Shown in pieces: positions 1,918 through 58,028 of a stretch of 64,000 nt of DNA. The notes below the pieces were generated by a model. The model saw nothing but the letters and a program-made list of their open reading frames with translations. It was not told the DNA's origin and ran no database searches. The DNA lies in the IMG/VR virus record IMGVR_UViG_3300027985_000918, positions 310,001 to 374,000 of that record. One strand, 5' to 3'. The position numbers and the translations under genes are program-made. The stretch's first letter is position 1. Each line of letters starts with the position of its first letter.

Positions 1918-2276
1918 TCCAAAGCGCCACCACGGGTGCCATCAAAATAGGACGGTCCTCTGACCCGGAACGTCGCCTCCGAGACCTCCAAACCGGCTCC
2001 CCCTTCCGACTAAAGATCATCCTGGTCATTGAGGGCGGGGGATGGCGGGAGTCCGAACTCCACCAACGGCTTCGGCGCTATCGCTCCCAGGGCACTTACA
2101 AAGGGGAATGGTTCATCGAGCCCGCACTGGGAGAACTCCCCAACGACATCTACGAGCGCCTGGACCTCGATGATGTGAACACCTGGTGGGTGACCGATGC
2201 GGGGGCCGTTCACTTTCCGGGGCCCCCCCAGAATCAGGGATGGGCGCCCGGTTCGGGATGCCACCACCCCCGATAA
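1890..2276 (+). CDS. GIY-YIG family nuclease (T5orf172/MUG113-like)
   Basis: LYVIQ...IKIGRSSDPERRLRDLQTGSP...ESELH...GEWF. Confidence 0.88.
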   Translation: MQGGLHLYVIQSATTGAIKIGRSSDPERRLRDLQTGSPFRLKIILVIEGGGWRESELHQRLRRYRSQGTYKGEWFIEPALGELPNDIYERLDLDDVNTWWVTDAGAVHFPGPPQNQGWAPGSGCHHPR

Positions 2277-2302
2277 TCAGCCTATGGATCCCTCCCCAGT
2301 AG
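2272..2302 (+). promoter_or_regulatory. Putative class-I (late) promoter
   Basis: GAT-AATCAGCC-TAT-N13-GTAG, upstream of 2332. Confidence 0.6.
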
Positions 2303-22947: not shown

Positions 22948-22978
22948 TCACTCAGGGGCCGCCGATAGGCGAGCAACC
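22948..22978 (-). promoter_or_regulatory. Putative class-I (late) promoter
   Basis: GGT-TGCTCGCC-TAT-N13-GTGA. Confidence 0.6.
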
Positions 22979-22981
22979 GAA

Positions 22982-30714: not shown

Positions 30715-30747
30715 CTACTGATATGTGGGGTGCATAGGCACTCTATT
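30715..30747 (-). promoter_or_regulatory. Putative class-I (late) promoter for decoration + MCP
   Basis: AAT-AGAGTGCC-TAT-N12-TCAGTAG; the variant downstream element is shared with 35309-35338. Confidence 0.6.
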
Positions 30748-30761
30748 GAGCAACCCCCCAG

Positions 30762-30798
30762 AAAAAAGAAGGCCCGGCCGAGAAACGGCCGGGCCTTC
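30762..30798 (-). terminator. Rho-independent terminator after the scaffold gene
   Basis: Perfect 13-bp stem GAAGGCCCGGCCG-agaaa-CGGCCGGGCCTTC followed by T6 on the minus strand. Confidence 0.9.
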
Positions 30799-35362: not shown

Positions 35363-38300
35363 TCAACTGGGTAGTTCCTTGTCCTCTGTTACGGCCCTCA
35401 TATACGCCCGGAACGCATCCGGTCTCATCTCCCGGATGCGCTTCCTCTCCTTGGGGTCGGTGACGTTTTTGAGCCATTCCTGCTTCTTCTGTTCCGGGGT
35501 CTTCTCAGGATTCTGCTTGTCTTCCCGGACCTTCCGACCGTCATCCTTCGGCTCGACCTTCTGATCGAGAACCGAGAGGTCTCCAGTCTCACTCACATGG
35601 CGGACCCGAGCTACGTTCGGATTCATCTTGTCGGGCACCGTTCCCGACAGCTTCTCTGCGGTAGACATCGTCAAACGCAGATCCTGAACCTGGACTCCCT
35701 CCCCTGCCTTTAGGCAGCTCTCCAGATCCTCCTGGGTCACAGCCTTGGCGATGCAGTGTGCCAGCTCATCGGCGGCCCCCTTGAGGGCCTTGTCGTCTGT
35801 CTTGGCCTGGCGTACCCTTTCGGCCAGACTCTCAGGGTCTGTGGTAGGCTTAGAAGTGGGCTTGGTTTTACCCTTCCCCTTCTCATCGGTCTCCTTCCCC
35901 TTGTGGAAAGCGTTCAGGAACCCTTGGGTTACAGTCATGTCGTTTAGGGCCAGCATCTTGAGCACATCTCGGGCGAACGCTCTCCCCTCTGCCGTGATGT
36001 GGTTGTCCTCATCATCATCCGTAAGAACCCTACCGATGGCCTCATAGGGGCTATTATCCCCTGCCACAGTTTCCACCAATTCATCGTCCGACATGATGTC
36101 CAGAGCATCCCTGACCTTGACCCTCCCCTCAGGGCTGTACAAATCAGAAGCCCCCTTCAACAGTACGTCTTCGTCCCCAAGGACAGCCAGAGACTGAGCC
36201 ATCCTCTGGAAGCTCTTAGACATCTCCTCCGTGCCGGAGAGCTGGCGACCTTGTACAGCAGCGGCCAACATCATCCCCGACTTGATAGCATCCAGCTCGA
36301 TGTACTCGTCTGATTCGGGGTCGGCCTTATCCAATTCCTGCTTGAGCTGGTCGGCAGCAGCATCCAGAAGCCCCGGCCCCGCCTTACGGAACTGGTGGTA
36401 AGCCTCAAGAGACCGCCCATGCAGCTCCTCCGCCGTTTTGTTGTTGTTGTTGACCGCCCGGCCACCAACAAGACGAGGGTTAGCCACCACCTTCGTGGCG
36501 AACACATACTCAGCCAGGCGCTTCGCTCGCACCTGGGGGGCAGCCTCCGCCAACCCCTTGGTCCCCCTCTTGAGAGCAGACTGAGCCCTCTTCAAGACAT
36601 CCACAGTCAACCCCCCATCCTCCGCACGAGCGCTCAGAAGCTGTCCCATGTGAGAAGCATAAGCCTCTGCCAGCTCCTGCTTAGCGGAGGCCACATTCTT
36701 CTCGTACTCTGCCTTAAGCCTCTGGATATGATCCCGAACCCCCTGAGCACTCTCCTGATCTTCCGGAACCTCTGGGTACTCCGGCTCTTCCGGCCACAAA
36801 TCACCCAGGTCCATTCCCTGGACGGCCTTGTCGAAATCAGCAAGCTGTCTCTGCTGCTTGGCCCTCTGCTGTTCCCGTTCCTTAACCTTTCGCTCTTCCG
36901 CTTGCTGGGCAGCGACCTCTGGATCTTCTTCCTCCTCACCTTCCCCGCCCCCTTCAGCCCTCCTCTTAGCGGATTCTTCATCGGGAGCCGACGTGGGCTG
37001 CTTGGACTTGGGAGGCCAAACACCCCAGCCGTTCTCCGTCTGCCAGTAGTCTCCCTCTTTGTGTTCAGCATCCTGTGGGACCTTCCCAGCAATGCGAATA
37101 GGAGGACCTGACAAGACCATCAACATCCGGTCACCGGCATCCGTGATAGCGGCAACCTTCTTGTAGTTCAGGGAGAGATCGGGATCCTTCTCAGCCTTCC
37201 CCGTGTCGTCCACGTCCGGGTCATACTCGTCCATCCGATTGCGACGAAGGTCCTGCCGGGGAGGCTTCTTCGATGGCTTCGGACGATTCATCCGCTCTAC
37301 TTCCTCGTTCTCCTTCTCCCCCTCATCTTTGGTCGCCTGCCGGTACAGGTAAGCCGAAGCCACTCTCCCGGCTGCCTTCCTGATCCACTCTGCAGCCAGG
37401 CGGAGGGACGTACTTGCCCCCTTGCCCAGCCGGACCGGATCTTCGTCAGAGCCCTTCTTGTCAAGACGTTTCATGACCTCGCCGGAGGCGAGGTACTTGT
37501 CGGCCAAACCGGGGACCAGGTACTGGCTCTTAAGGGTCGAGGGTTCATGGCCCACCGCCTTGGCGGTCTCTTTTAGAGCCTGCTCAAATTCCTTCTTGAG
37601 CAGCTTCCCCCGCTCCTTCTTATCCTCGGGCAGCTCCCCACCCTTGGAGCGGATATCCTTGAGACGGCTCTGCATCTCGGCATTGGCGTGGTACCCCCGC
37701 ATGTCCTTAGCGGTGATGCCGAAAGGCTCCAGGTACTCGTTCACGTCTTCGGCAGAGATATCCCCCGTTAGGCTGTCATTCTCCCCCTTTCCCTCTTTGG
37801 CGGCCTTGAGAGCCGACACCAAAGCCGGATCACTGACAACCTTCTCGTGACTCACGCCGGACTTGCCGACGTACTTGACGGTGACTTTGTTGCCGGAAAA
37901 GGTCAGATGCTTGACCTTCCAACCTGTGACCCCATAGTGCCCATCCTCAGCAGACTCCTCATTGCCGACCCGCTCGTATGTCTCGTCCATGAGGCCAACA
38001 ATCAGGGCCTTTAGCCGGGTGTCCTCGTCCTTGGACTTCAAATCCTTCGACACCTGCGCCCTCAGCTTGGTGATGGATCCACGTAGCTTCTCTACCTGCT
38101 TAGCCTTCTCTCGGTTCCGGAGTTCAATCTGGCCCTCGCTGTACTCGTAGACGGTCGTGGTCCCTTTGCCATCGGCCTTGGGGACCTCCTTCTTCTTCTG
38201 ATACTTGGCGGACACCCGAAGAACGGCCTCCTTAGAAAGCCCCCCCGCTGTTGCGGCGGCCTCATCGTAGCGGAGCTTGAACAGTTTGATCTCCATGTCC

Positions 38301-40483
38301 TGCTTGCGCCCCTTGGGCACTGGCTCCACGATCACCACAGGTTCCCCAGACTTCTCGTCAGTCTTGAACTCTTTGATAACCCCCTTCTTATTCTTGTACT
38401 TGCCGTACAAGACGGGGTCACCGACATTCAGGGTGAAGGTTTTGGCGATCCGCAGAGCTGCCTCCTTCATCCACTCGTTATCCTCCGGGGGGTACAGCTC
38501 CTGGAGGTGTGGCATCTCATCCTGGAGGCCCGTGTAGACCCCCTTGAGCAAAGTCTTCTTCGCCTGGGTGTTCAGGGCCCTATGGACCCTGTTCCATGTG
38601 GTGGAATTCTCCAGGGCACGGTCCAGGAGGGACATCGAGGCTCCCGCCCAGAGGTTTCCGGCCCCCCCCTGCTCATGGACGTAATCAATCACTTCGTCCA
38701 CGATCTGCTGCATGAACGCCCGGATCTCAGTCGCTTCGTTGTGGTAGGTGTCCTCGTCAAGGTGACTGATTCCCCCTGGGGCAAGAAGGTCCCGGAGGTG
38801 GGTGATTTCATGAATCAGAACCGAGTACACCTCCTTGGCGACCCGGGCCTCATTGTCCAGAAACGCCTTGGGGGACTTGGCAGCATCGAGAGTGACCGTC
38901 ATCTGGTACTTGAACGCATGGCTCCCCTGAACCCTCTGCGTAACTGCCCCCCCTACCACATACTGCCGGGGACCGCTGAAACCCAAGGCCTTGTTTCTGG
39001 ACTCAACCTTGACATCCACAGCCACAAGGGCGCCCTTCACATCCTGGACGACGTACTTAGCGACGACAAAACCCCATGTGTCCGGCCGGAACCCCCGCTG
39101 GGAGTACAGAGAGTCAGAAGGGTCATCTCGAAACCGTAGGTGCTGGGGCAGCACCTGCATGATCTTGTCCGTCAGCCCCTTGGCCTCGACCTTGTTGATC
39201 GGAATAGGACGAGCAGCCCTCTTCTTGGTGTACGCCTGTGCCACTCGGAACACTGCCCCAGCGGTACGCTGCCAGCTTTCTGAGGTCATCCCCATCCGCT
39301 TAGCCGGCACCTGTCCTTTGCCCACCGTCCCCTGTCCCCGGGCAAGCCTCATAAGGGGCTTGCCATACAAACCGGACATGCTCAGCGCCCTCTGCATCCT
39401 GAACTTGCCCACATCGGACAGCTTCTCGGGGGCCGACATGAAGGCAACGAAAGACTCTGCAAAGTCCTCCCTCTCGTTGGTCTTGGCGTACTCAGTGGGC
39501 ACATGTAGGGCTTCGATAGCCTGGGCCACCGCAGAGTCACCCTGGGCATACTCTGCCACCTGCTCTTCGGTGAGAACAGGGTGGTGGTAGCTAGAGTACG
39601 AGTCCAGCACTCCCATCTTGTCCTGCTTCTGGCGCCATGCCCGGGAAAGAACCTGGTCGAACCTCTCAGTCCCAGGAGTCACCCCCTGGTTCTCCTCGAC
39701 GTGCTTCTGGAACCAGGACCGCAGAGCCTTATTCCGGCTGAGCCGCTTAGCGATCTGCTTCAGATGGTAGACGTTAGCATTCCCCATCCAGAAGGTCAGA
39801 TCTTCTATGAGCCCCCGAAAATCCTGCTGGGCCTCGGAGCCCATCTCCAGAAAGGGGTCGGAGCTGCTGTACTTCTCCATGCCTGCACGGAGCTTGTGAA
39901 CCTGAGGCATCCCCCAGACCTCAATCTCGTCGAAGGACCAGGAACCAGTCGGGATCGGACCCTCCCACTCAGTGTCGAGACCGTCGAGGTATTCAAGGGT
40001 GGTGTGGGGGCGGTAAACCGTCCAGCTATCCGTTACCTCGACCCCAATGTCCTGGATAGCCGACTTGAGACGGTCCCGAAGCTCTGCCATGCGGTGACTG
40101 AATCGAATGGGGAGAATAGCAACCCGCCGCTGCTGGGATTCATGGGTGAAGTAGTCCAACCCCTCCAGTTTGGCCTGTACGGGCCCCCTCAGTTCTTCGG
40201 ACACCACCCGCTGGCAGGTCTCGATGAACTCGTCCTCATGACCCTTGACGTTGCCAACGTAGAGCAGAGTGACGTGGGGCGGACTCTTGTCGTTACCCGA
40301 CTTTTTCACCGGAAACTGGCTGGAAATCCCCCGGGGTAGAGGAATGAACAGCCCTGTCCACTCCGTGCTGTCGCCGGTCTTTTTGCCGTCATCGGGACCG
40401 GCGTGCCTTTTAGCCCAATCAGCCTTGACCTGCTGCCGGACGGCCAATCTGCGAGCCTGTGCTTGAAGAATAGGGTGCTCCAC
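35363..40483 (-). CDS. 1706-aa multidomain virion protein: 2H phosphoesterase, zincin metallopeptidase(s), SH3-like, topoisomerase IB, helical C-terminus
   Basis: PHVTL and PHTTL; TEYAKTNEREDFAESF; HEITH...EIRAF; VGDPVLYGKYKNKKG; YERVGN, VGKSG, AKDMR, VGH, SQYL. Directly downstream of portal. Confidence 0.88.
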   Translation of the reverse strand: MEHPILQAQARRLAVRQQVKADWAKRHAGPDDGKKTGDSTEWTGLFIPLPRGISSQFPVKKSGNDKSPPHVTLLYVGNVKGHEDEFIETCQRVVSEELRGPVQAKLEGLDYFTHESQQRRVAILPIRFSHRMAELRDRLKSAIQDIGVEVTDSWTVYRPHTTLEYLDGLDTEWEGPIPTGSWSFDEIEVWGMPQVHKLRAGMEKYSSSDPFLEMGSEAQQDFRGLIEDLTFWMGNANVYHLKQIAKRLSRNKALRSWFQKHVEENQGVTPGTERFDQVLSRAWRQKQDKMGVLDSYSSYHHPVLTEEQVAEYAQGDSAVAQAIEALHVPTEYAKTNEREDFAESFVAFMSAPEKLSDVGKFRMQRALSMSGLYGKPLMRLARGQGTVGKGQVPAKRMGMTSESWQRTAGAVFRVAQAYTKKRAARPIPINKVEAKGLTDKIMQVLPQHLRFRDDPSDSLYSQRGFRPDTWGFVVAKYVVQDVKGALVAVDVKVESRNKALGFSGPRQYVVGGAVTQRVQGSHAFKYQMTVTLDAAKSPKAFLDNEARVAKEVYSVLIHEITHLRDLLAPGGISHLDEDTYHNEATEIRAFMQQIVDEVIDYVHEQGGAGNLWAGASMSLLDRALENSTTWNRVHRALNTQAKKTLLKGVYTGLQDEMPHLQELYPPEDNEWMKEAALRIAKTFTLNVGDPVLYGKYKNKKGVIKEFKTDEKSGEPVVIVEPVPKGRKQDMEIKLFKLRYDEAAATAGGLSKEAVLRVSAKYQKKKEVPKADGKGTTTVYEYSEGQIELRNREKAKQVEKLRGSITKLRAQVSKDLKSKDEDTRLKALIVGLMDETYERVGNEESAEDGHYGVTGWKVKHLTFSGNKVTVKYVGKSGVSHEKVVSDPALVSALKAAKEGKGENDSLTGDISAEDVNEYLEPFGITAKDMRGYHANAEMQSRLKDIRSKGGELPEDKKERGKLLKKEFEQALKETAKAVGHEPSTLKSQYLVPGLADKYLASGEVMKRLDKKGSDEDPVRLGKGASTSLRLAAEWIRKAAGRVASAYLYRQATKDEGEKENEEVERMNRPKPSKKPPRQDLRRNRMDEYDPDVDDTGKAEKDPDLSLNYKKVAAITDAGDRMLMVLSGPPIRIAGKVPQDAEHKEGDYWQTENGWGVWPPKSKQPTSAPDEESAKRRAEGGGEGEEEEDPEVAAQQAEERKVKEREQQRAKQQRQLADFDKAVQGMDLGDLWPEEPEYPEVPEDQESAQGVRDHIQRLKAEYEKNVASAKQELAEAYASHMGQLLSARAEDGGLTVDVLKRAQSALKRGTKGLAEAAPQVRAKRLAEYVFATKVVANPRLVGGRAVNNNNKTAEELHGRSLEAYHQFRKAGPGLLDAAADQLKQELDKADPESDEYIELDAIKSGMMLAAAVQGRQLSGTEEMSKSFQRMAQSLAVLGDEDVLLKGASDLYSPEGRVKVRDALDIMSDDELVETVAGDNSPYEAIGRVLTDDDEDNHITAEGRAFARDVLKMLALNDMTVTQGFLNAFHKGKETDEKGKGKTKPTSKPTTDPESLAERVRQAKTDDKALKGAADELAHCIAKAVTQEDLESCLKAGEGVQVQDLRLTMSTAEKLSGTVPDKMNPNVARVRHVSETGDLSVLDQKVEPKDDGRKVREDKQNPEKTPEQKKQEWLKNVTDPKERKRIREMRPDAFRAYMRAVTEDKELPS

Positions 40484-48996: not shown

Positions 48997-49026
48997 CTAC
49001 TGAGCGAAACCTATAAACCAAATACC
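48997..49026 (-). promoter_or_regulatory. Putative class-I (late) promoter
   Basis: GGT-ATTTGGTT-TAT-N12-GTAG. Confidence 0.65.
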
Positions 49027-49034
49027 CGCCGGAA

Positions 49035-50054: not shown

Positions 50055-50456
50055 TCACCACCTGCTCTGCTTCACAGAGTCGAGCCAATACACCATATCC
50101 TTCTCCAGGTTGGCGCTCGGCCCAAACTCCTTGTCCTGGTTGTACAGAGAAACCTTGAACTTCCTCGGGGTGCCCTTCACAGTGATCGTGAAAGGCTCCT
50201 TGGTGTCGTGGATCGTGATGATGAGCTGGTAGGGGCCCCGCTTGACAGTATTCTTGCTGAAGCTCCACCACTCCGTGATGACCTTCTCCACGTCCACCCA
50301 CCAGTCTCGAACCACCGCCTGCATCCGGGTCTCGAACGGGGTCGTGTTGACCCCAGCGAAATTCGTCCCCCGGGCCTCACGCAGGAAGGGGACCAGAAGG
50401 GAGCGAGTCTCCGGACGCTCCGCAGCCAGCTTCTTCAGATCGTTGTACAAACTCAT
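50055..50456 (-). CDS. Hypothetical protein with N-terminal KLA-P tag
   Basis: MSLYNDLKKLAAERPETRSLLVPFLREA; ATGA coupling. Confidence 0.7.
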   Translation of the reverse strand: MSLYNDLKKLAAERPETRSLLVPFLREARGTNFAGVNTTPFETRMQAVVRDWWVDVEKVITEWWSFSKNTVKRGPYQLIITIHDTKEPFTITVKGTPRKFKVSLYNQDKEFGPSANLEKDMVYWLDSVKQSRW

Positions 50457-51709
50457 CGTCGGATCCTCCACCTCACGTTCAAAGTCTGAGCGGTGTTGAA
50501 CTCGATGTCGAAACCGCTGGCGCCCTTGTTCGTGACCCAGGGGGGCTCATCATTAGCTGGGTGGGAATCCAGCTCCAAGGCCACGTCATAGCTGTCGTCC
50601 GGCTGGGGGATGCCGAATGTTACCGTCTCGGTAGCAGAGGCGGCGAACCCCTGAGTCCCACCCAGAGAGCCGTTGAACTCGGCGTTCAGGTTCCCCGCCA
50701 GCAGCGAAGAGTAGGTGCTGTTGAGCAGAGCCAATGTGGAAGTCTCCAGCAGGGAGACCACCCCCAGTACCGAGTTGGTAGCCTGCCCAGACTGGTCCCC
50801 GCTGAGCTGGAGCCGCTTGGCAGAACCCATACTCATGCCCAGAAGCAGTAGGCTCCCACCCCCATCCAGGTCCACCGAGACCGCCGGGGACAATCCCGTC
50901 TCCGAAGCCACCTGGTGACTGTTCTCGATGATGTACGCCTCATGGGCCTGAGAGGGGAGATCCTGGGCGGTATCCCACCGGAGAGACACGGCGGCCTCGC
51001 AGACCGCAGAGCGCAAACACAGCCGGGCCGCTTCTTCCCCAACCACCAGGGAGCCAAGGCCCCCTCCGAATCGGCAGAGGTCCGTCTCGACGAAGTTGCA
51101 TGCCGTAACCCACAGGGGGCGTCCGCCCCCCAGAGAATCGTCCCAGAGGGTGCAGCTCTTGATGTAGATCCCCACCTCCCCCACCGTCGAGGCAGCCCCG
51201 CCGACGATGCGGAGAGCGGCCTTGTTGTCGTGGGCGTTGTGGATCTCGAACCCCTCAATGAGACAAAACTCCGGGGTGGTCCCAAGCTGGGAGGACAGGA
51301 TGACCGTATGGTCATTCCCCGGGGCATTCGGGGTGGCGTTCAGAGGGTCCTTGAGGGTGGGTCGTCCGAGACCCACCAGACTCACCCCGTTCCGCACAAT
51401 GTTGATCGTCTCTTCGTACACCCCAGGCATCACCAGGATGATGTACGGGTTGGTCGGGCTGGCGAGACTTGGGACTGCGTCGATAGCCGACTGGATAGTC
51501 GTGTACGCAGCCCCCGTCCCCGACTTACCAACAACCAGCACATTTCCGATAGACCGAAGACCAGCGAGCTGATTCAGCAAAATGCCCCCCGTCACGACAG
51601 CGTCGGTGAACTTGAGGGCACCCGTGACAGCGTCCCGCTCGATGAGCAGGGTGTCGCCGGAGCCGGGCTCCACCTGTAGGGAATCTGCCTTGAAGGGAGG
51701 CTGTGCCAT
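50453..51709 (-). CDS. Pectin-lyase-fold (beta-helix) tailspike-like protein
   Basis: YTTIQSAIDA...ILVMPGVYEETI cap; C-terminal VTFGIPQPDDSYDV lectin-like module. Confidence 0.7.
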   Translation of the reverse strand: MAQPPFKADSLQVEPGSGDTLLIERDAVTGALKFTDAVVTGGILLNQLAGLRSIGNVLVVGKSGTGAAYTTIQSAIDAVPSLASPTNPYIILVMPGVYEETINIVRNGVSLVGLGRPTLKDPLNATPNAPGNDHTVILSSQLGTTPEFCLIEGFEIHNAHDNKAALRIVGGAASTVGEVGIYIKSCTLWDDSLGGGRPLWVTACNFVETDLCRFGGGLGSLVVGEEAARLCLRSAVCEAAVSLRWDTAQDLPSQAHEAYIIENSHQVASETGLSPAVSVDLDGGGSLLLLGMSMGSAKRLQLSGDQSGQATNSVLGVVSLLETSTLALLNSTYSSLLAGNLNAEFNGSLGGTQGFAASATETVTFGIPQPDDSYDVALELDSHPANDEPPWVTNKGASGFDIEFNTAQTLNVRWRIRR

Positions 51710-51717
51710 CGTCTACC

Positions 51718-52356
51718 TCACTCCCCATCCCGCAGGAGTGGGGCCAGGTGCTGCCGGAGTTCGGGAACCTCGGCTGCGAGCTTCTTTAGGTCGGCCTCCA
51801 AAGAAGCTCGGTGCCCGCTCCGATGTGCCGCATTGACGATGTCGTCAATCTGGTCCACCACCTGCTGGGCACGGTCAGCCAGGGCCACCGCCACGGGGCG
51901 GATCTTCTTTTCAAGCAGGGTAGGGGCCTCGATGTAGTGGCTCCCGAACCTCTCCAGACCCTTGAGCTGGCTCTGAACACTCTTGATGGCGTCCACTACG
52001 GACTTCACGTCAATGAACTGGGAGAAGCTCTTGTCGTTCTGGATCAGCTCGTATGCCTGGACGTAGGGGTCATCCCCAATATTTGCCGCCTTGTCCCTCA
52101 TTGCGAATCTCCGCTCGTTCAGCTTAACCTTGGCCCAAACCGCACCTGCGTGTCGGATGAACTTCTCTGCCGTGGATTTGTCCGGAAACCTCAGAGGGTC
52201 CCTCTGATTGTTGGTCGGAGACAACCAGGCCCCTTGGGCATCCCGGATGTACCAGCTCCGGGGGGTACTGATACCAACGGGAACCGCCTCGTAAGGTCCC
52301 GGGAAAGTGTACTTTTTGATCAGGTCGTAAACCCGCTGGATCTCAGGAGTAGCCAT
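51718..52356 (-). CDS. Hypothetical protein with C-terminal KLA-P tag
   Basis: Start MATPEI; ends RASLEADLKKLAAEVPELRQHLAPLLR. Confidence 0.7.
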   Translation of the reverse strand: MATPEIQRVYDLIKKYTFPGPYEAVPVGISTPRSWYIRDAQGAWLSPTNNQRDPLRFPDKSTAEKFIRHAGAVWAKVKLNERRFAMRDKAANIGDDPYVQAYELIQNDKSFSQFIDVKSVVDAIKSVQSQLKGLERFGSHYIEAPTLLEKKIRPVAVALADRAQQVVDQIDDIVNAAHRSGHRASLEADLKKLAAEVPELRQHLAPLLRDGE

Positions 52357-52357
52357 A

Positions 52358-53041
52358 TCACACCACCACGTCGTAGCCAACATCAACGGTTTCGGCTGGC
52401 TGCAGCTCGATGCCGAGGGCAACCGTGAACCCGGTCTTGGTCTTACTGGTGACCCTAACGGGAAAAAACCCTGAAGGCTCCAGAAGAACCCGGTAAGTCG
52501 CCGTCGGGAGAGCCGACGTGAATGTCACCGTTTTTGAGCTATTGTCCGCCTGAGCGAACGTCAGAGTTCCCCCCAGAGCGCTCGCTGCAGATGTCGAGAC
52601 CAGAATCGCCCAGTCCACATCCTTCTCATCCCCGACAGCCCCGTAAGTTGAAGGGGCCACCAAGAGGAAGGACGTGATGGTCTTGTTCTCGACCCGCATG
52701 GGGGTTCCGTCGGGGGTTGTTACCTGAACCCGGTAATCGGTGTTGTTCAGAAGCCCGGGGGCCACCGCTACCGTGCGGGAGGCCTGCCCGTTGAACGTCT
52801 CAGTGCCGCTGGTCACGGACGACTCGGTGGTCAGGAGCTGGGCCAGATCCACCGAGTCGTACATGTCCTGGAGGACCTCTTCGGGCACCCCCGTCATCGA
52901 GTCTGTAATCAGCCCCCGAGGCCCACGAATATTGCGAACCGACGATGCGGACTGCTCATTGATGACGATGTCCCACACGTACTCCTGTCCCCCTCGGGAG
53001 GACTTGTATGTGAGGACTGTCTGGACTCGGGAGAGGGCCAC
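52358..53041 (-). CDS. Virion fibre or lectin-like protein
   Basis: Two xxYRV...KTxTxF beta modules; GGAGG RBS. Confidence 0.6.
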   Translation of the reverse strand: MALSRVQTVLTYKSSRGGQEYVWDIVINEQSASSVRNIRGPRGLITDSMTGVPEEVLQDMYDSVDLAQLLTTESSVTSGTETFNGQASRTVAVAPGLLNNTDYRVQVTTPDGTPMRVENKTITSFLLVAPSTYGAVGDEKDVDWAILVSTSAASALGGTLTFAQADNSSKTVTFTSALPTATYRVLLEPSGFFPVRVTSKTKTGFTVALGIELQPAETVDVGYDVVV

Positions 53042-53055
53042 AGATCACCTCCGGC

Positions 53056-54141
53056 TCAGCTCCAGACCGAGAACTGGTACTTGTACTTGATGCCGCCCTG
53101 GTCCATCTTCGCCTGGAGCTGCTTCCCCGTCATGCGCTTGATGTCGTCCTGGTTGGCCTTGGCCCACAGGAACATCTTGCGGGCGCCCGCAGGACTGGTA
53201 CTCACCAACTTGGTGTAGTGGGGGTCTCCACCGAAGGCGTACTCATCAAGCTGCTTGTCGGTGTAGCCATTGTTGAGGGTGACGTCGAACGAGGTCCACT
53301 CAGCCTTGATATAGAACTCATCCTTCGCCTTGATCTCGACGGGGGCATAGTCCACCGGCTCAACCTGGAGGTAGTTGACATCCTCTTCTTTAGGCATCCA
53401 ACGACCCGTGAGGGACTGGGAAACCCAATCGGGGTACTCCAAACCCTCTTTATCCAGATCCTTGAACGCCTTCTCGATGGCCTTCTTGAGGCCAGCAGCA
53501 GAGGCTTCGGCGGTCTGGGAGGCGTTGGGCTTCCAGTCCCGCTCCAGGTTCTCGATCATGAAGTAGTCGTAGATCTTCCCCAACGGTCCCGTCCCGTTGA
53601 GACTCTGGATCTGACCACCAATGCCAAACGTGAACCGCTTGAGGCTCCGCTTACCCTTCTGGGGCAGTTCCTCGATGACGACGTAGTGCCGGGGGTGCCC
53701 GGAGATACGGATACGGGTCTTGTCGCCGACGAGAATCTTGTCCCACTTCTCACGGGCGATTCGAGCAGCGGCCCACCGCCCCATGAAGTCCTCATCGGCC
53801 CTGGCTCCCTCAAACTCCCGCCATGCCTGCTCGGCAGCCTTGCCGGTCAGAATGCTCTTGGTCTGGGGGTAGTAGAGGACCCGGTCACCCGCCCGGAAAG
53901 GGATTCCCTTCTCATCCACGCCGGGGCGCCGGGCGTTGATCCAGCGGGGGTCTCCCCCCTGACCACGGCTCCGGCCGGACCAGCCGGCCGACTTATCGTC
54001 GTTGCCCTCAACATACCCGAGCCCCGGGTCCTCCGCTGACTCCACGTTGAGGTGGGCGTGCTTCCGAAGGAGAGGAACCAGGTGCTTGCGGATGGACGGC
54101 ACGTCCACTGCCAACTTGCTCAGCTTGCTGTAGAGATTCAT
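53056..54141 (-). CDS. Hypothetical multi-segment protein with N-terminal KLA-P tag
   Basis: MNLYSKLSKLAVDVPSIRKHLVPLLRKHA; internal KSA, RWA and RIA sites. Confidence 0.72.
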   Translation of the reverse strand: MNLYSKLSKLAVDVPSIRKHLVPLLRKHAHLNVESAEDPGLGYVEGNDDKSAGWSGRSRGQGGDPRWINARRPGVDEKGIPFRAGDRVLYYPQTKSILTGKAAEQAWREFEGARADEDFMGRWAAARIAREKWDKILVGDKTRIRISGHPRHYVVIEELPQKGKRSLKRFTFGIGGQIQSLNGTGPLGKIYDYFMIENLERDWKPNASQTAEASAAGLKKAIEKAFKDLDKEGLEYPDWVSQSLTGRWMPKEEDVNYLQVEPVDYAPVEIKAKDEFYIKAEWTSFDVTLNNGYTDKQLDEYAFGGDPHYTKLVSTSPAGARKMFLWAKANQDDIKRMTGKQLQAKMDQGGIKYKYQFSVWS

Positions 54142-54172
54142 GTTGTTACCTGCCTGGAACTACTGGGTTAGG

Positions 54173-54481
54173 TTACCAAACCCCTGTTGTCTCAAAACCC
54201 CGCCTCTCGAACCAGCTCTGAAGAGACAGCATAGCTTCCCGATTCGAGGACCACAGAGTCACACAGTCGAAACTCTCTCGGATGCCGAGGTCTGGGATGG
54301 TAGGCACCCCCGCCATCGCCACCTTGCCATCTCTCTGGGATCGGAGCAGCCCGGGGATGTAGCGGTAATCCTTCGCCCCGTACAAGACCGAGAATCGAAA
54401 CTCAGCGGTGGCGATGCGGCTGACCCACCTCCGGGCCACTCGCCTTGCCATGACGATCCTCTTCTCGTTATCCTGGGACAT
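54173..54481 (-). CDS. Hypothetical protein, first gene of the late operon
   Basis: RRVARRWVSRIA leader; AGGAG RBS. Confidence 0.7.
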   Translation of the reverse strand: MSQDNEKRIVMARRVARRWVSRIATAEFRFSVLYGAKDYRYIPGLLRSQRDGKVAMAGVPTIPDLGIRESFDCVTLWSSNREAMLSLQSWFERRGFETTGVW

Positions 54482-54512
54482 GCTGCTCCTACGGTAAAAC
54501 CGGGGCTTTGCT

Positions 54513-54542
54513 CTACCGATAGCCTCACATAGGCGATCTACC
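54513..54542 (-). promoter_or_regulatory. Putative class-I (late) promoter heading the morphogenesis operon
   Basis: GGT-AGATCGCC-TAT-N12-GTAG. Confidence 0.65.
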
Positions 54543-54553
54543 GGGGAGCCGCT

Positions 54554-55180
54554 TCAGTCCAGAATAAGCGGAAGGGGAAACAGCCGCTCGCCGGATCGGC
54601 GGACTTCTCGGAGGATGTTCAGGTTGGCGGCGATGAACTCAAACAACCGGATGTACAGGTCGTAAGTGTCGGTCTTGGGACCACCCAGCTTGACGGCCTC
54701 CTGAAGGTGCTTGATGGTCCGCAGGAACCGATGTCGGACCAAACCCTGGGTAACCCCAAGCTGTTTGGCGACTTCCGACTGGCAGGTGGTCTTCCACATG
54801 CCAAGCATAATCTGGACATCCAGATCATTGCCCAGGAACCCCTGGAGATCTGCCAGAAGGGTTTCCTCTTCGACACGGGGGAGCTGGAATAGAAACTGGA
54901 TGCGGGCGGTCGCCCTCTGGAGACGATAGTGAACTGTGGGCTGGGAGCACTCAAACAGCCCGGCGATCTCCGTTTGCTTGAGCTTTTTGAAGAAGTACAG
55001 ATCCACGAAGTCTGCTTCCAATGGAGGCAGGAACTCCATGTACTCCTTGACCACCTCAATCTGAGCCAGATCCTCGTCGGAGGGTTCGGTGAAGATGGAG
55101 TCCAGGAACCCCATCCCATCTTCGATAGAGAACCTGGTCTCGATGTCGCTAGGATCGATCATGTGTCCTGTCCAAGCCAT
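54554..55180 (-). CDS. Transcription regulator with two sigma70 region-4-like HTH domains
   Basis: LKQTEIAGLFECSQPTVHYRLQRA and CQSEVAKQLGVTQGLVRHRFLR; no region 2 visible. Confidence 0.75.
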   Translation of the reverse strand: MAWTGHMIDPSDIETRFSIEDGMGFLDSIFTEPSDEDLAQIEVVKEYMEFLPPLEADFVDLYFFKKLKQTEIAGLFECSQPTVHYRLQRATARIQFLFQLPRVEEETLLADLQGFLGNDLDVQIMLGMWKTTCQSEVAKQLGVTQGLVRHRFLRTIKHLQEAVKLGGPKTDTYDLYIRLFEFIAANLNILREVRRSGERLFPLPLILD

Positions 55181-55275
55181 GCGTGCTCCCCGGCTAAACC
55201 CCCAAGAAGGGCTTTCTGCACAGCTCAAACAGACCAACCGACCTTCCAACCATACCCGACAACCGGGCACTGGCC

Positions 55276-55821
55276 CTATGCCGGGGCGGGCTCCAGTTGC
55301 TCCAGGAAGATTCGAGGGATGGAGGCAATACGTCGCCAGGACCTCAGCTCAAACTCAATGTACGCATTGTCTCCGTCGAGACCGATGACTTTCCCACTCA
55401 TACTGCGGAACTTCCCCTCCATGACCGTCACCACCGAACCGATCTCCACCTCTGCGGCGATCATCTGTTGGAGCTGACGTCGTAGGGATTCGATTTCCGA
55501 ATCGGGGAGGACGGAGAGGGTTCTCATACGGTGAGGGCCGGATGTGGTAGACATCACGGAGGAGACATAGGGACGTCTCTCCAGGGCAAAGTACGTGGCC
55601 TCAGGGAGCCCCGAGGCCACGAACACATAGCCCTCCATCAAGTGGATGGTGATGACCTTGGACTGCTTCCGGTAGATAGCCGTGGGGATGAAGATGGGGA
55701 AGTCCGCATCGACGCCGAGGTCCATCCTCAAACAGGTACTGAGGATTCCTTCCTCAACCTTCTGCTCACCAAGCCGACTCAGCTCAATGGCGATCCAAGT
55801 TGTCCCATCCCGTGTGTCCAC
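55276..55821 (-). CDS. nusG: NusG/RfaH-family transcription elongation or antitermination factor
   Basis: NGN domain (IFIP...LMEGYVFV) plus KOW EIGSVVTVMEGKFRSMSGKV. Confidence 0.85.
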   Translation of the reverse strand: MDTRDGTTWIAIELSRLGEQKVEEGILSTCLRMDLGVDADFPIFIPTAIYRKQSKVITIHLMEGYVFVASGLPEATYFALERRPYVSSVMSTTSGPHRMRTLSVLPDSEIESLRRQLQQMIAAEVEIGSVVTVMEGKFRSMSGKVIGLDGDNAYIEFELRSWRRIASIPRIFLEQLEPAPA

Positions 55822-57256
55822 CTGCGGCTACCCCGTCAAGTTCGACGATTCGCAGTGCAAGAAGCCGGGCGAACAGCATTGCATCAAAGGACGAAAGTTT
55901 CCCCGATGGCGAAGTTTGGCCTTGGGTTCCCTTGCTCTTCTTTGCGACAGCACGGTAGTCTACGTGAACTCCGTTCCCGGTCAACTCCGAAAGTTTACCG
56001 GGCCGTTCAGAACTTTTAGCAGATTTGTGGTGAGTTTGGGAAGTTTCTTCTTCCCGCACAGGAGCCGGGGCTTGGGCTGAAGGCTGCGGAACCCCAGTAA
56101 TCATGGCCTGGGGGATTCCCACGGGAACCTGCTGGACGATCACCGTAGGAACCCCAGAACCAACCACCCCGTGATGCAATGAAGCCAGATCGCACTTGAG
56201 CATCGCCCCCGAAGGTCTCCCGGGTCGGGAAGCCAGTCGGCTGGCATACCCCATGAGGACCTCGCCCCTCTTCGCCACCTCAGCGATCTTCTCAGGCTTC
56301 CAGTACACCACCGGACGGGGACCTCCCAGGTACACCTGATAGGCCAGCATGCTGGCCTCGGCCAGACGCTGGTAGATGGTGGAAGGGCTGACCCTCTCCA
56401 GCAGAAGGTCTACCGCTTGGTAGGCCATCGAGAGCCCCCAGTTGGGAGAGGGTTCCCCCTGGGGGTTCACCTTGATCCCCAGAGAGTTGATGACCGTCAG
56501 ATACAACCCAATCTGGTCCAAGCGGAGGTACTGGCTGACGTTATCCTCGTTGATGACCCCCAGCATCGAGACCCCCTCGACAGCCTTGAGGGCATCTCGG
56601 ATGTGGCACTCGGTGACAGTGGCGATAGTCGTGAGGGCGTCAAAATCTGCCTCGATCCCCTCCTGCTCGCAGATCTCCTGGAGACGCCTGGAGATCACAT
56701 CGGGGGTCAGAGCCTCTATGACAAAGGCCGGGGCGCACCGGGACAGCACCGTGTCCCGCATCTTCTCCGGCTCAGTGGTGCAGAAGATGCAAACAAGCTG
56801 TTTGTCGTCGCTCCCCGAGACCTTGTCCTCCAACGGCTTCAGGAGGGCATCCAGAGCCTCCTTGCTGAGCTGGTGGGCCTCATCAAACAGGTACACCCTT
56901 CTCTTGCCCGAGAAAGTATCGTACTTGATCTCTTCCTTCAGCCGGTTGATGTCGTCCTTGCCGCTGTTCGTAGCGGCGTCGACCTCGGAGAAGCAGTCCG
57001 AAGAGCCATTATCCAGGATGGACCGGCAGGAGGGGCACTCGTTGCAGGGCCCCCCTTCCTGAGGGTTGTCACACAGCAGAGCCCGAGCCAGGATACGCCC
57101 CAAGGTGGTCTTCCCGGAGCCGAAACCCCCAGCAAAAAGGTACGACTGCTGGAACCCCCTACCAGACGCCACGAAGCGGCGGAGGATGGTCTTGGTCGCC
57201 TCTTGACCCAGAACTTCGTCATAGGATGTGGGGCGGTATTTGAGGTCGAGGCTCAC
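55784..57256 (-). CDS. dnaX: DNA polymerase III gamma/tau clamp-loader subunit
   Basis: KYRP, GQE, GSGKTT, C..PCNECPSC, EVDAA, DEAH, LLKPLE, CTTE, SRC. Confidence 0.95.
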   Translation of the reverse strand: MSLDLKYRPTSYDEVLGQEATKTILRRFVASGRGFQQSYLFAGGFGSGKTTLGRILARALLCDNPQEGGPCNECPSCRSILDNGSSDCFSEVDAATNSGKDDINRLKEEIKYDTFSGKRRVYLFDEAHQLSKEALDALLKPLEDKVSGSDDKQLVCIFCTTEPEKMRDTVLSRCAPAFVIEALTPDVISRRLQEICEQEGIEADFDALTTIATVTECHIRDALKAVEGVSMLGVINEDNVSQYLRLDQIGLYLTVINSLGIKVNPQGEPSPNWGLSMAYQAVDLLLERVSPSTIYQRLAEASMLAYQVYLGGPRPVVYWKPEKIAEVAKRGEVLMGYASRLASRPGRPSGAMLKCDLASLHHGVVGSGVPTVIVQQVPVGIPQAMITGVPQPSAQAPAPVREEETSQTHHKSAKSSERPGKLSELTGNGVHVDYRAVAKKSKGTQGQTSPSGKLSSFDAMLFARLLALRIVELDGVAAGGHTGWDNLDRH

Positions 57257-57263
57257 GGTGCTC

Positions 57264-57542
57264 CTACCTGCGGATCTCCCAGAGGATCAAGGTACCGTCG
57301 TCTTCCCGAGCAGCCAGGAAAGGGCCGTTCTCCCGGAAGAACACCTTCAAGGTCTCCGGAGTCCACTCCTTCAGGGTTGCCAACCTCTTGTGGCTCTGGT
57401 CGACCTTGCCAGGTCCCTCAGACAGATAGGGGACCGGAGCACAATCCTCCCCGTTGCTGTAGGCATACGGCAAATCCCGGGTCAGGGACTTACGGATCTG
57501 CTCTTCCGAGTTCAGATGGTGGATGACTTCCAAAGGCCACAT
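57264..57542 (-). CDS. Hypothetical protein
   Basis: Fills the operon gap between tightly packed genes. Confidence 0.55.
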   Translation of the reverse strand: MWPLEVIHHLNSEEQIRKSLTRDLPYAYSNGEDCAPVPYLSEGPGKVDQSHKRLATLKEWTPETLKVFFRENGPFLAAREDDGTLILWEIRR

Positions 57543-57545
57543 GGC

Positions 57546-58028
57546 TCAGTCCCCTTCGGGATCGTCGTCCCCGAACAGCTCCGTGATGATGTCATCATCG
57601 GGCTTGGCCCCGGAGGTACGCCAGAACCCGTGGCGCTCGACCTCGTCCTTGTAGAAGGCCACGTCGGGAGGTTGAACAAAGAACCTGCACTCACCGCCGG
57701 GCTCCTTCTCCACAGCCCGGCACCCGCAGAGATGATGATCCAGGAGGGCGATCTGCTGCTCTGTGCTGTACTCCTGCCACACGTCGTGACCGAGGGTGAT
57801 GATGAACTTGTAGTCCACCTCTCCCAGAATGCCGAACAGCTTGTTGGCCTTGGAAGTCTTGCCGCTGATCACGGCATCTCCGCTCTTGCTGGCCTTCTCC
57901 TTGAAGATCACGGCGATCTCATCCACGCACACAATCAGGTCAGGGTGGTAGTTTGCCACCAGGTCCTTCAGGGTCTGGTAGACCTCAGGCGGGGCATTCC
58001 AGGTGGTCTGGGTGTTCTCTTCGGACAT
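57546..58028 (-). CDS. Putative phage metallopeptidase-like protein (degenerate HExxH)
   Basis: YHPDL...FIITL...W...ALLDHHLCGC...PDV...VERHG. Confidence 0.65.
   Translation of the reverse strand: MSEENTQTTWNAPPEVYQTLKDLVANYHPDLIVCVDEIAVIFKEKASKSGDAVISGKTSKANKLFGILGEVDYKFIITLGHDVWQEYSTEQQIALLDHHLCGCRAVEKEPGGECRFFVQPPDVAFYKDEVERHGFWRTSGAKPDDDIITELFGDDDPEGD

What the first reader, a model, noticed from the sequence alone, without database searches (positions are those of the whole stretch)
54513..55821. NusG paralog plus a double sigma-region-4 protein sitting at the head of the late operon
Seen: the last two genes of the replication operon are a NusG/RfaH-like factor and a protein with two region-4-type HTHs and no region 2. 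A class-I promoter follows immediately. Inference: a late switch in which the tandem HTH protein recognises the spaced promoter elements (the first two are about one helical turn apart) and the NusG paralog gives processivity over long operons with internal terminators. This differs from the T4 gp55/gp33 and lambda Q paradigms.
Basis: inference. Interest (0 to 1): 0.65.

Follow-up and report, generated by a model that had tools for sequence, protein, structure and literature searches.

The report
Phage NusG paralog plus tandem sigma-4 protein
A 402-kb uncultured phage, and every related huge phage examined, carries side by side a NusG-type elongation factor and a protein made of two sigma-region-4 DNA-binding domains, always followed by the same two-part promoter box, which points to an undescribed way of redirecting the host RNA polymerase.

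Summary
Window 55276-55821(-) encodes a NusG-family protein with NGN and KOW domains. Window 54554-55180(-) encodes a 208-aa protein with two tandem sigma-region-4 domains and no region 2. A conserved motif, CGGTAG-N5-CTAT-N12-GGTAGAG, starts 10 nt after its stop codon.

The window lies in a 402-kb phage with terminal repeats. The two genes are adjacent in 80 of 80 related viral loci, always after a DNA-replication module and before a structural module. The upstream box sits at the same spot in about 50 of 64 distinct relatives. It is strongly intergenic in four whole genomes.

- The downstream GTAG element is shared with a much more abundant ECF-like promoter class, GGTAAC-N15/16-RGTAG.
- The phage also encodes two conserved ECF-like sigma candidates.
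- So the tandem sigma-4 protein most likely replaces -35 recognition beside a sigma-2-bearing factor, much like T4 MotA/AsiA.
- It is probably not a stand-alone specificity factor.
- The box also precedes the replication block and a helicase gene, so it is not strictly late.
- Internal terminators are no more frequent than chance.

DNA binding, RNA polymerase contact and timing are all untested. No RNA data exist for this phage.

The parts
55276..55821 (-). NusG-family gene (181 aa, GTG start). It overlaps the end of the clamp-loader gene by 38 nt.
   Evidence: Pfam NusG 23.3 bits, PHROG 6386. AF2 model and Foldseek matches to NusG/RfaH/Spt5. 74 homologues, found on the same contigs as the HTH family.
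55504..55800 (-). NGN domain (about residues 8-106), containing the conserved LMEGYVFV strand.
   Evidence: Pfam NusG covers residues 9-112.
55291..55440 (-). KOW beta-barrel (about residues 128-177).
   Evidence: Pfam KOW covers residues 128-155 at 18.1 bits. A profile of the family against PDB sequences finds Spt5 and NusG KOW domains. The AF2 model shows strands 130-177.
55181..55275 (-). 95-nt spacer between the two genes, with a GGGGAG ribosome-binding site before the ATG. Its length varies from 7 to about 130 nt in relatives.
   Evidence: Sequence. Gene positions in relatives. No Rfam match.
54554..55180 (-). Tandem sigma-region-4 protein gene (208 aa plus stop).
   Evidence: The family has 985 hits of about 200 aa at 50-79% identity.
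54878..55090 (-). Sigma-4 domain 1 (residues 31-101). Recognition helix SQPTVHYRLQRA.
   Evidence: Z 11.6 to M. tuberculosis SigL sigma-4 and Z 10.2 to E. coli SigmaE region 4 bound to -35 DNA. Sigma70_r4_2 3.6e-10.
54686..54874 (-). Sigma-4-like domain 2 (residues 103-165). Recognition helix TQGLVRHRF.
   Evidence: Internal repeat of domain 1 (hhalign 94.7%). Second Sigma70_r4 stretch. Z 6.2 to RpoS region 4.
54596..54673 (-). Conserved C-terminal helices with the invariant NLNILREV motif. Function unknown.
   Evidence: Invariant columns L187-R195 in the alignment. Helices 170-190 in the AF2 model.
54528..54544 (-). Class-I upstream box CCGGTAGATCGCCTATG. Half-sites are CGGTAG (54543-54538) and CTAT (54532-54529).
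54511..54517 (-). GGTAGAG, the -10-like GTAG element, 12 nt after CTAT. The same element is shared with the GGTAAC-N15/16-RGTAG promoter class.
54173..54481 (-). p102, the first gene after the promoter. Conserved in 77 of 80 relatives. Function unknown.
   Evidence: No Pfam or PHROG hit. The protein-atlas search gives only weak fold neighbours.
49012..49028 (-). Further class-I box, ahead of the genes leading to large terminase and portal.
30733..30749 (-). Further class-I box, directly after a strong terminator and ahead of a 231-aa gene and the major head protein gene.
30768..30798 (-). Strong intrinsic terminator (13-bp stem, T6 tail).
22964..22980 (-). Further class-I box (score 17.3).
2270..2286 (+). 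Further class-I box on the + strand (score 17.8), co-oriented with the downstream + strand genes.

Best explanation
The two genes form a conserved transcription-takeover module of a large clade of uncultured huge phages that have no detectable RNA polymerase of their own.

Proposed mechanism:
- The 208-aa protein is not a sigma factor. It is two sigma-4 domains in tandem.
- Its two HTH domains most likely read the direct-repeat half-sites CGnTW and CYTAT, one helical turn apart, just upstream of a GTAG -10-like element.
- It thereby supplies upstream promoter recognition in place of an ordinary -35 contact.
- The GTAG element and DNA melting would be handled by a sigma-2-bearing factor, probably one of the phage's two ECF-like sigmas.
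- This amounts to sigma-4 substitution, functionally like T4 MotA/AsiA at middle promoters.
- The neighbouring NusG paralog binds the elongating polymerase and keeps it processive, probably against Rho rather than hairpin terminators, over the 25-55 kb co-directional blocks that these promoters head.
- Because the first box always lies 0-14 nt after the HTH stop codon, the newly made proteins would act next to their own genes.

Status of each step:
- Shown: the domain make-up, the synteny, and the motif with its conservation and intergenic, co-oriented placement.
- Inferred: DNA binding by this protein, contact with the polymerase flap, partnership with a phage sigma, antitermination, and timing.
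For: - Domain identities.
- The pair is adjacent in 80 of 80 loci, in the constant order primase-like, metallopeptidase, clamp loader, NusG, HTH, p102.
- The box lies 0-14 nt after the HTH stop in 50 of 64 distinct relatives, against 0.1% of control windows.
- In relatives' loci there are 76 box hits on the gene strand against 7 on the other. Almost all are at or downstream of the HTH gene.
- Intergenic hits in whole genomes are 15 of 18, 27 of 34, 24 of 31 and 17 of 19 (p 4e-10 to 4e-13). Most lie 5-70 nt before a same-strand start codon.
- The abundant second class is GGTAAC-N15/16-RGTAG, with 79 intergenic sites here. Its equivalents are GACTTACTT..GCGTAGAT, GGCTTAYTT..GAGTAGTCTAGG and TGTAAACTT..CGCGTAGAG in three relatives. 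GTAG is constant while the -35 element varies.
- The recognition helices of the two ECF-like sigmas vary in those genomes. Those of the tandem protein, and the class-I box, do not.
- No phage RNA polymerase is found by Pfam.
- Class II is absent from genome 336.5-402 kb, where class I heads the replication and structural blocks.
- A predicted NusG-like/HTH complex scores 0.47, against 0.00 for the best of 3 controls. This is weak support only. That mark was reached by 58 of 80 solved complexes and 2 of 110 mismatched pairs, but scores of 0.60 or less were seen in only 7 of those 80. The runs agree in at least 65% of contacts, and the partner's pLDDT is at least 75.
Against: - There is no binding, expression or transcription-start data. 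No RNA run holds this phage.
- Two complete ECF-like sigma candidates could read class-I promoters without this protein.
- The NusG and HTH genes lie inside a block headed by class-I boxes, with no class-II promoter nearby. A simple cascade from class II to HTH to class I is therefore not evident.
- The conservation argument rests on four whole genomes and is confounded by phylogeny.
- No clear covariation was seen between the variable fourth residue of helix 2 (L/F/K/Y) and the box.
- The GTAG element is present at only about half of the class-I sites.
- The position weight matrix was trained on the post-HTH sites, so those sites match it by construction.
Confidence: 0.45

Rival explanations
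1. One of the two complete phage ECF-like sigmas recognises class-I promoters by itself. Candidates are the 507-aa protein at genome 394592-396115 (+), which is divergent from a class-I box, and the 394-aa protein at genome 85015-86199 (-). Under this reading the tandem sigma-4 protein is a sigma-4 decoy or anti-sigma-like inhibitor. It would occupy the beta-flap, or compete for DNA, to shut off host or early class-II transcription.
For: - Both sigma-like proteins have sigma-2-like and sigma-4-like segments and are conserved in 4 of 5 relatives' contigs.
- Class I shares the GTAG element with the ECF-like class.
- The 507-aa gene sits next to a class-I box in a synteny conserved in two relatives.
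Against: - The conserved class-I half-sites flank the place where a -35 hexamer would lie, 16-17 nt upstream of GTAG. That stretch itself is not conserved.
- The sigma recognition helices vary between genomes while the box does not.
- A pure decoy would not explain why the box is fixed next to the HTH stop codon in about 50 of 64 relatives.
Confidence: 0.2
2. The tandem HTH protein is an ordinary DNA-binding regulator, either an activator or an autoregulatory repressor, that happens to use sigma-4/LuxR-type HTH domains. It does not replace sigma-4 on the polymerase. The NusG paralog works independently of it.
For: - Sigma-4 and LuxR/GerE HTH domains share a fold, and LuxR-type effector domains also appear in the fold search at Z 6-8.
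- The complex prediction gives only weak support.
- The site directly after its own gene could serve feedback control.
Against: - The best sequence and structure matches are to sigma-4 including region 4.1 (71 aligned residues, Z 10-11.6), clearly above the LuxR-type rows.
- The boxes lie at a fixed distance from a -10-like element in many intergenic regions, which is typical of a promoter element rather than an operator.
Confidence: 0.15
3. The CGGTAG element is not a promoter part. It is an ops-like loading site in the non-template strand for the NusG paralog, as with RfaH, and is read in transcripts that run through from the upstream operon.
For: - In this phage the first half-site CGGTAG equals ops positions C3-G8. 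These form the hairpin with the G5 and T6 loop bases that RfaH contacts (numbering from PMC11001881; the full ops sequence is from my own knowledge).
- The site lies in operon leaders next to the NusG paralog gene.
Against: - In relatives the element is only CGnTW, so the closing G and the central G vary and the hairpin is not conserved.
- The most conserved part is CYTAT, which has no ops counterpart.
- Several sites lie in short divergent intergenic regions, or just after a strong terminator, with little room for an upstream promoter.
- The AF2 model shows a beta-barrel KOW domain, not an RfaH-like autoinhibited helical form.
Confidence: 0.08

Closest known systems
T4 MotA/AsiA sigma appropriation at middle promoters
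   Same: The promoters keep the -10-type element of another class but replace -35 recognition with a different upstream box, read by a phage protein that takes over the sigma-4 position. Here this is inferred from motif architecture.
   Different: There is no sequence or fold relation to MotA or AsiA. The box is bipartite (CGnTW-N6-CYTAT). The partner sigma is probably a phage ECF-like sigma, not the host primary sigma.
ECF (group 4) sigma factors
   Same: Domain 1 is a typical ECF-type sigma-4 (Z up to 11.6; Sigma70_r4_2 3.6e-10).
   Different: There is no sigma-2 domain, so no -10 recognition or melting is expected. A second sigma-4 copy stands where nothing would follow in a sigma factor.
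Specialised NusG paralogs encoded with their target operons (RfaH, UpxY, LoaP, TaA, plasmid ActX/TraB)
   Same: It is an NGN-KOW protein encoded beside the long, horizontally mobile operon it would act on. Background is in PMC7819879.
   Different: It is phage-encoded and always paired with a sigma-4 protein. Its recruitment signal is unknown. There is no predicted RfaH-like helical KOW state. It scores nearer to housekeeping NusG and Spt5 than to RfaH in sequence searches.
T4 gp55/gp33 late transcription
   Same: A phage splits sigma functions over small proteins that bind host core polymerase. gp33 occupies the flap as sigma-4 would (own knowledge, and PMC7824862).
   Different: gp33 does not bind DNA, and late T4 promoters have no upstream element. 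Here the sigma-4-like protein has two intact HTH domains and there is a conserved upstream box.
Lambda Q
   Same: A DNA element at the promoter is coupled to an antitermination function for a long late operon.
   Different: In lambda one protein does both jobs and there is no NusG-fold factor. There is no similarity to Q in any search here.

Membership tests
NusG/Spt5 family | N-terminal NGN domain | tested here: met
   PF02357 scores 23.3 and 24.2 bits against a cut-off of 22.2. The AF2 fold and Foldseek give probability 1.0 to NusG, RfaH and Spt5.
NusG/Spt5 family | C-terminal KOW beta-barrel | tested here: met
   The AF2 model shows strands 130-177. A family profile hits Spt5 and NusG KOW domains. 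Pfam KOW alone is below its cut-off (18.1 against 22.3).
NusG/Spt5 family | Binding to the beta-prime clamp helices of elongating RNA polymerase | not testable with these tools
   The host and its polymerase are unknown. Only the conserved LMEGYVFV strand resembles the NGN core motif, and that resemblance is from my own knowledge.
RfaH-type specialised paralog | Recruitment by an ops-like non-template DNA element in operon leaders | tested here: inconclusive
   CGGTAG equals the ops core in this phage, but relatives have only CGnTW.
RfaH-type specialised paralog | Autoinhibited all-helical KOW state | tested here: inconclusive
   AF2 predicts a beta-barrel KOW. A prediction cannot exclude a second state.
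Sigma-70 family sigma factor | Sigma-2 domain (core binding, -10 recognition, melting) | tested here: not met
   No PF04542 match in this ORF; the only genome hit is at 85351-85515. Only about 30 residues and one helix precede sigma-4 domain 1. No sigma-2 alignment appears in the fold searches.
Sigma-70 family sigma factor | Sigma-4 domain with HTH | tested here: met
   Present twice.
T4 MotA/AsiA-type appropriation system | Homology to MotA or AsiA | tested here: not met
   No such hit in Pfam, PHROGs or the fold searches.
T4 MotA/AsiA-type appropriation system | A promoter class that shares its -10 element with another class but has a distinct upstream box in place of -35 | tested here: met
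   Class I and class II share GTAG. The class-I half-sites flank the -35 position.
LuxR/GerE-type HTH regulators | Four-helix effector domain as the best match | tested here: not met
   LuxR-type rows score Z 6-8, below sigma-4 rows at Z 10-11.6 that also cover region 4.1.

The most novel reading that the evidence does not exclude
The NusG paralog and the tandem sigma-4 protein form one two-subunit initiation factor that stands in for a sigma. The NGN domain would sit on the beta-prime clamp helices where sigma-2 binds and hold the non-template GTAG/CGGTAG strand. The tandem sigma-4 protein would hold the flap and the bipartite upstream box. After promoter escape the NGN-KOW subunit would stay on as the antiterminator, so that initiation specificity and elongation processivity are handed over within one complex.
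Probability: 0.08. Interest if true: 0.9.

Novelty: new variant of a known kind. Interest (0 to 1): 0.62.

Why it matters
Huge phages without their own RNA polymerase must reprogram the host enzyme over hundreds of kilobases, and how they do this is largely unknown.

- This is a widespread module. The HTH family has 985 hits and several protein-atlas clusters of 65-182 members, and the pair is adjacent in 80 of 80 loci.
- It is phage-restricted and very conserved.
- It joins a sigma-4-only DNA reader to a NusG-family factor, with a defined and equally conserved DNA box. That makes it directly testable.
- If the sigma-4 substitution model holds, it would be a second, independently evolved form of sigma appropriation. 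It would also be the first functional assignment for a phage NusG paralog.
- It gives portable promoter definitions (class I, and the ECF-like class II) for annotating these genomes.
- None of the reviews and papers searched mention the pair.

Tried and rejected
- RNA evidence: no RNA run holds the stretch. Only DNA runs of the probable source, a hydrothermal-vent metagenome, hold it.
- Known RNA families in 52000-58000: none.
- Phage-encoded RNA polymerase: no match for PF00562, PF00623 or PF00940. The PF00940 control rang nowhere, and very divergent phiKZ-type subunits could also be missed.
- Cultured relatives: only one GenBank record matches, the unannotated uncultured phage LR745208.1. 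Five MAG contigs of inconsistent taxonomy match in 185,579 species genomes. So there is no host and no isolate.
- Covariation between the variable fourth residue of helix 2 (L/F/K/Y) and the first half-site: no clean rule, and the comparison is confounded by phylogeny.
- Sigma-70 type promoters near the pair: at or below shuffled expectation.
- p102: no family and only weak fold neighbours.
- Complex of the two proteins: weak support only. The score is 0.47, against 0.00 for the best of 3 controls. That mark was reached by 58 of 80 solved complexes and 2 of 110 mismatches, but passes at 0.60 or less are more often wrong than right. I do not claim binding.
- An early shuffle control of the box position weight matrix gave as many hits as the real genome at threshold 11. 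The signal therefore lies in intergenic placement, orientation and conserved position, not in raw count.
- The large representative-protein search was not needed. No other genetic code was used.
Full report
**Context.** The window is bases 310001-374000 of a 402,383-bp virus record with direct terminal repeats. GC content is about 60%. It comes from a hydrothermal-vent metagenome. A rough gene call gives 342 genes. One co-directional minus-strand block runs from genome 394.4 kb to 338.4 kb. Within that block, moving in the direction of transcription:
- First come ribonucleotide reductase, a polymerase processivity factor, an exonuclease, an SbcC-like ATPase, a primase-like protein, a metallopeptidase and a clamp loader.
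- Then come the two genes of the finding.
- Then come p102, several unknown proteins, a pectinesterase-like beta-helix protein, large terminase, portal, a 1706-aa protein, a protease and the major head protein.

Whether these blocks are single operons is inferred from orientation and spacing only.

**The NusG-like protein (55276-55821, minus strand, 181 aa).**
- Pfam NusG is just over its cut-off. KOW is just under. A PHROG 'transcription antiterminator' family matches.
- With an alignment of 27 homologues, the AF2 model has pLDDT 88.5. It shows an NGN domain, a long linker helix and a five-strand KOW barrel.
- Foldseek finds bacterial NusG, RfaH bound to an ops-paused complex, and archaeal Spt5, at E 5e-9 to 1e-6.
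- A family profile finds NusG over its full length, but finds no RfaH entry at E up to 1.
- It is a member of the NusG/Spt5 family. Subfamily assignment is open.

**The HTH protein (54554-55180, minus strand, 208 aa).**
- Homologues are about 200 aa and start at the equivalent of the ATG at 55180.
- Residues 31-101 are a complete sigma-4 domain including region 4.1 (Z up to 11.6).
- Residues 103-165 are a second, more divergent copy. hhalign of the two halves gives 94.7% probability, E 6e-8. Separate Pfam stretches support this.
- Nothing resembling sigma-2 is present.
- Both recognition helices are almost invariant across the family, as are an N-terminal acidic segment (IDPSE..RF..EDG..DSIFTEP) and a C-terminal NLNILREV helix.
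- The family is large: 985 hits in the word search, and several atlas clusters labelled as viral.
- It is essentially absent from bacterial species genomes. Five MAG contigs of inconsistent taxonomy are the only matches.

**Synteny.** In 80 of 80 IMG/VR loci fetched with the HTH alignment, the NusG paralog lies directly upstream. Clamp loader, metallopeptidase and primase-like genes precede it, and p102 follows in 77. The HTH protein is the best conserved of the set (38-79% identity).

**The cis element.**
- Ten nt after the stop codon lies CCGGTAGATCGCCTATG (54544-54528). Twelve nt further on lies GGTAGAG (54517-54511).
- An expectation-maximisation motif search on the 64 distinct post-HTH regions of relatives gives yCGnTW-N6-CYTAT at the same place.
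- It starts within -7 to +14 nt of the stop in 50 of 64 at 12 bits or more. Control windows upstream reach that score 0.1% of the time.
- Further copies in the relatives' loci are on the gene strand (76 against 7). They are almost all at or downstream of the HTH gene.
- Because the matrix was trained on those sites, I tested it on whole genomes: this phage and three relatives fetched in full. Hits at 12.5 bits or more are intergenic in 15 of 18, 27 of 34, 24 of 31 and 17 of 19 cases. Non-coding fractions are 16-21% (p 4e-10 to 4e-13). Most hits lie 5-70 nt before a same-strand start codon.
- The raw number of hits is not above a shuffle. Placement carries the signal.

**A second promoter class, and what it implies.**
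- K-mer enrichment in upstream regions reveals a far more abundant motif, aGGTAAC-N15/16-RGTAGg. It has 79 intergenic sites with strictly 15 or 16 nt between the elements.
- The three relatives have equivalents: GACTTACTT..GCGTAGAT (116 sites), GGCTTAYTT..GAGTAGTCTAGG (53 sites) and TGTAAACTT..CGCGTAGAG (14 sites).
- This is the layout of ECF-sigma promoters, an AAC-type -35 element about 16 nt from a CGTA-like -10 element (own knowledge).
- The phage encodes two ECF-like sigma candidates. One is a 394-aa protein (Sigma70_ECF 20.8 bits, just under its cut-off). The other is a 507-aa protein with a sigma-2/sigma-4-like C-terminal half. Both are conserved in 4 of 5 relatives' contigs.
- The GTAG core is constant in all four genomes, and it is also the third element of class I.
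- The -35 element of class II differs between genomes, as do the sigma-4 recognition helices of both ECF-like sigmas.
- The class-I box and the tandem protein's helices, by contrast, are invariant.
- Geometry agrees. The conserved half-sites flank the position where a -35 hexamer would lie, and that stretch is unconserved. The half-sites are direct repeats about 10 bp apart, as expected for two head-to-tail HTH domains.

**Mechanism proposed.** The tandem sigma-4 protein would substitute for sigma-4/-35 recognition at class-I promoters. It would work together with a sigma-2-bearing factor that reads GTAG. The NusG paralog would act as the processivity factor for the long blocks these promoters head. 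I put this at 0.45. It works like T4 MotA/AsiA but is not a member of that family.

**Timing.**
- Class II fills genome 5-221 kb and is absent from 336.5-402 kb.
- Class I heads the replication block (394419, 392498), the post-HTH structural genes (364528), the terminase/portal stretch (359012) and the head-protein gene, just after a strong terminator (340733).
- Class I also precedes a UvrD-like helicase gene (214786).
- So it is a replication-plus-morphogenesis class rather than a strictly late one.
- The NusG and HTH genes themselves lie inside a class-I-headed block, which leaves open how the module is first expressed.

**Terminators.** Terminator-like sites are not enriched. Only two strong ones exist on the gene strand, at 30798-30768 and 29009-28972. 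If the paralog antiterminates, Rho is the likelier target. This is an inference from what is known of RfaH-type factors (PMC7819879).

**The ops idea.** In this phage CGGTAG equals positions C3-G8 of the RfaH ops hairpin (numbering from PMC11001881). The resemblance fades in relatives (CGnTW), and the most conserved part, CYTAT, has no ops counterpart. I keep it as a low-probability rival.

**Complex prediction.** A predicted complex of the two proteins scored 0.47, against 0.00 for the best of three controls. This is weak support by the tool's own calibration. That mark was reached by 58 of 80 solved complexes and 2 of 110 mismatches, but a pass at 0.60 or less is more often wrong than right. 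The runs agree in at least 65% of contacts, and the partner's pLDDT is at least 75. This keeps the more radical reading alive, in which NGN plus tandem sigma-4 act as a split sigma substitute, at about 8%.

**Literature.** Searches found no description of a phage NusG paralog paired with a tandem sigma-4 protein. The jumbo-phage comparative review mentions minimal single-HTH sigmas and gp33 but not NusG. The huge-phage paper mentions sigma-70 and AsiA-like genes only. The only GenBank relative is an unannotated 485-kb uncultured phage.

**Limits.**
- Gene calls are my own rough ones.
- The promoter classes are sequence motifs without transcription-start data.
- The host is unknown.

Noticed in passing
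Whole genome; in the window e.g. 2692 (+), 4509 (+), 9618 (+) and 26527 (-) (genome 312692, 314509, 319618, 336527): There is an abundant ECF-like promoter class, aGGTAAC-N15/16-RGTAGg, with 79 intergenic sites. It is concentrated in genome 5-221 kb and absent from 336.5-402 kb. Relatives have the same GTAG -10-like core with a different -35 element.
   Followed up: yes
Outside the window: genome 85015-86199 (-) and 394592-396115 (+). Neighbouring genes are at 83674-84546 (+) and 393171-394361 (-).: Two ECF-like sigma candidates, each next to one of a pair of paralogous unknown proteins (28% identity to each other). For the 507-aa sigma, the divergent arrangement with this neighbour recurs in two relatives. 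These may be sigma/partner (anti-sigma?) pairs.
   Followed up: partly
Window 54082-54141, 51718-51790 and 50400-50471 (- strand). Also genome 393171-393235.: A roughly 20-aa motif, L..LA...PELR.HLVPLLR, sits at the extreme N or C terminus of four proteins. Three of them lie just downstream of the class-I promoter (p361, p234, p138). It also occurs in relatives G001 and G003. It may be a shared docking or targeting peptide.
   Followed up: partly
Window 54142-54172 (- strand), between p102 and p361: This short spacer carries GGTAAC..AGTAG..AGGTAAC just before the ATG. These are class-II-like words at a non-canonical spacing.
   Followed up: no
Proteins P0005 and P0012 (337-344 aa) from contigs of 326 and 147 kb: Longer family members carry the two-HTH unit twice, giving four sigma-4-like HTH domains. 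They keep the same N- and C-terminal conserved segments.
   Followed up: no
Window 35363-40483 (-): A 1706-aa protein between the portal and protease genes. It has a eukaryotic-type topoisomerase IB catalytic core (PF01028, 3.1e-30) and a 2'-5' RNA ligase/LigT-like domain.
   Followed up: no
Outside the window: genome 81.9-82.8 kb, and window-equivalent 82486-83170: There is a regular array of back-to-back class-II words about every 126 nt on both strands, near the 394-aa sigma gene. There is also a cluster of AAAGTTTC/AAACTTTC boxes upstream of a class-I-like site at the head of the replication block. These could be an origin or a regulatory array.
   Followed up: no
Locus L096 (genome 385053-389558, -): A 1501-aa ribonucleotide reductase with an inserted HNH/endonuclease-like segment, which is probably an intein.
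   Followed up: no
Loci L028, L031, L040, L045, L052, L054, L057 and L061, after the HTH gene: In one subclade an extra gene for a small protein with a lipoprotein-like signal peptide (MSRFGKI...GC) is inserted between the HTH gene and p102. Where examined (L028, L031), a second class-I box then precedes p102.
   Followed up: partly
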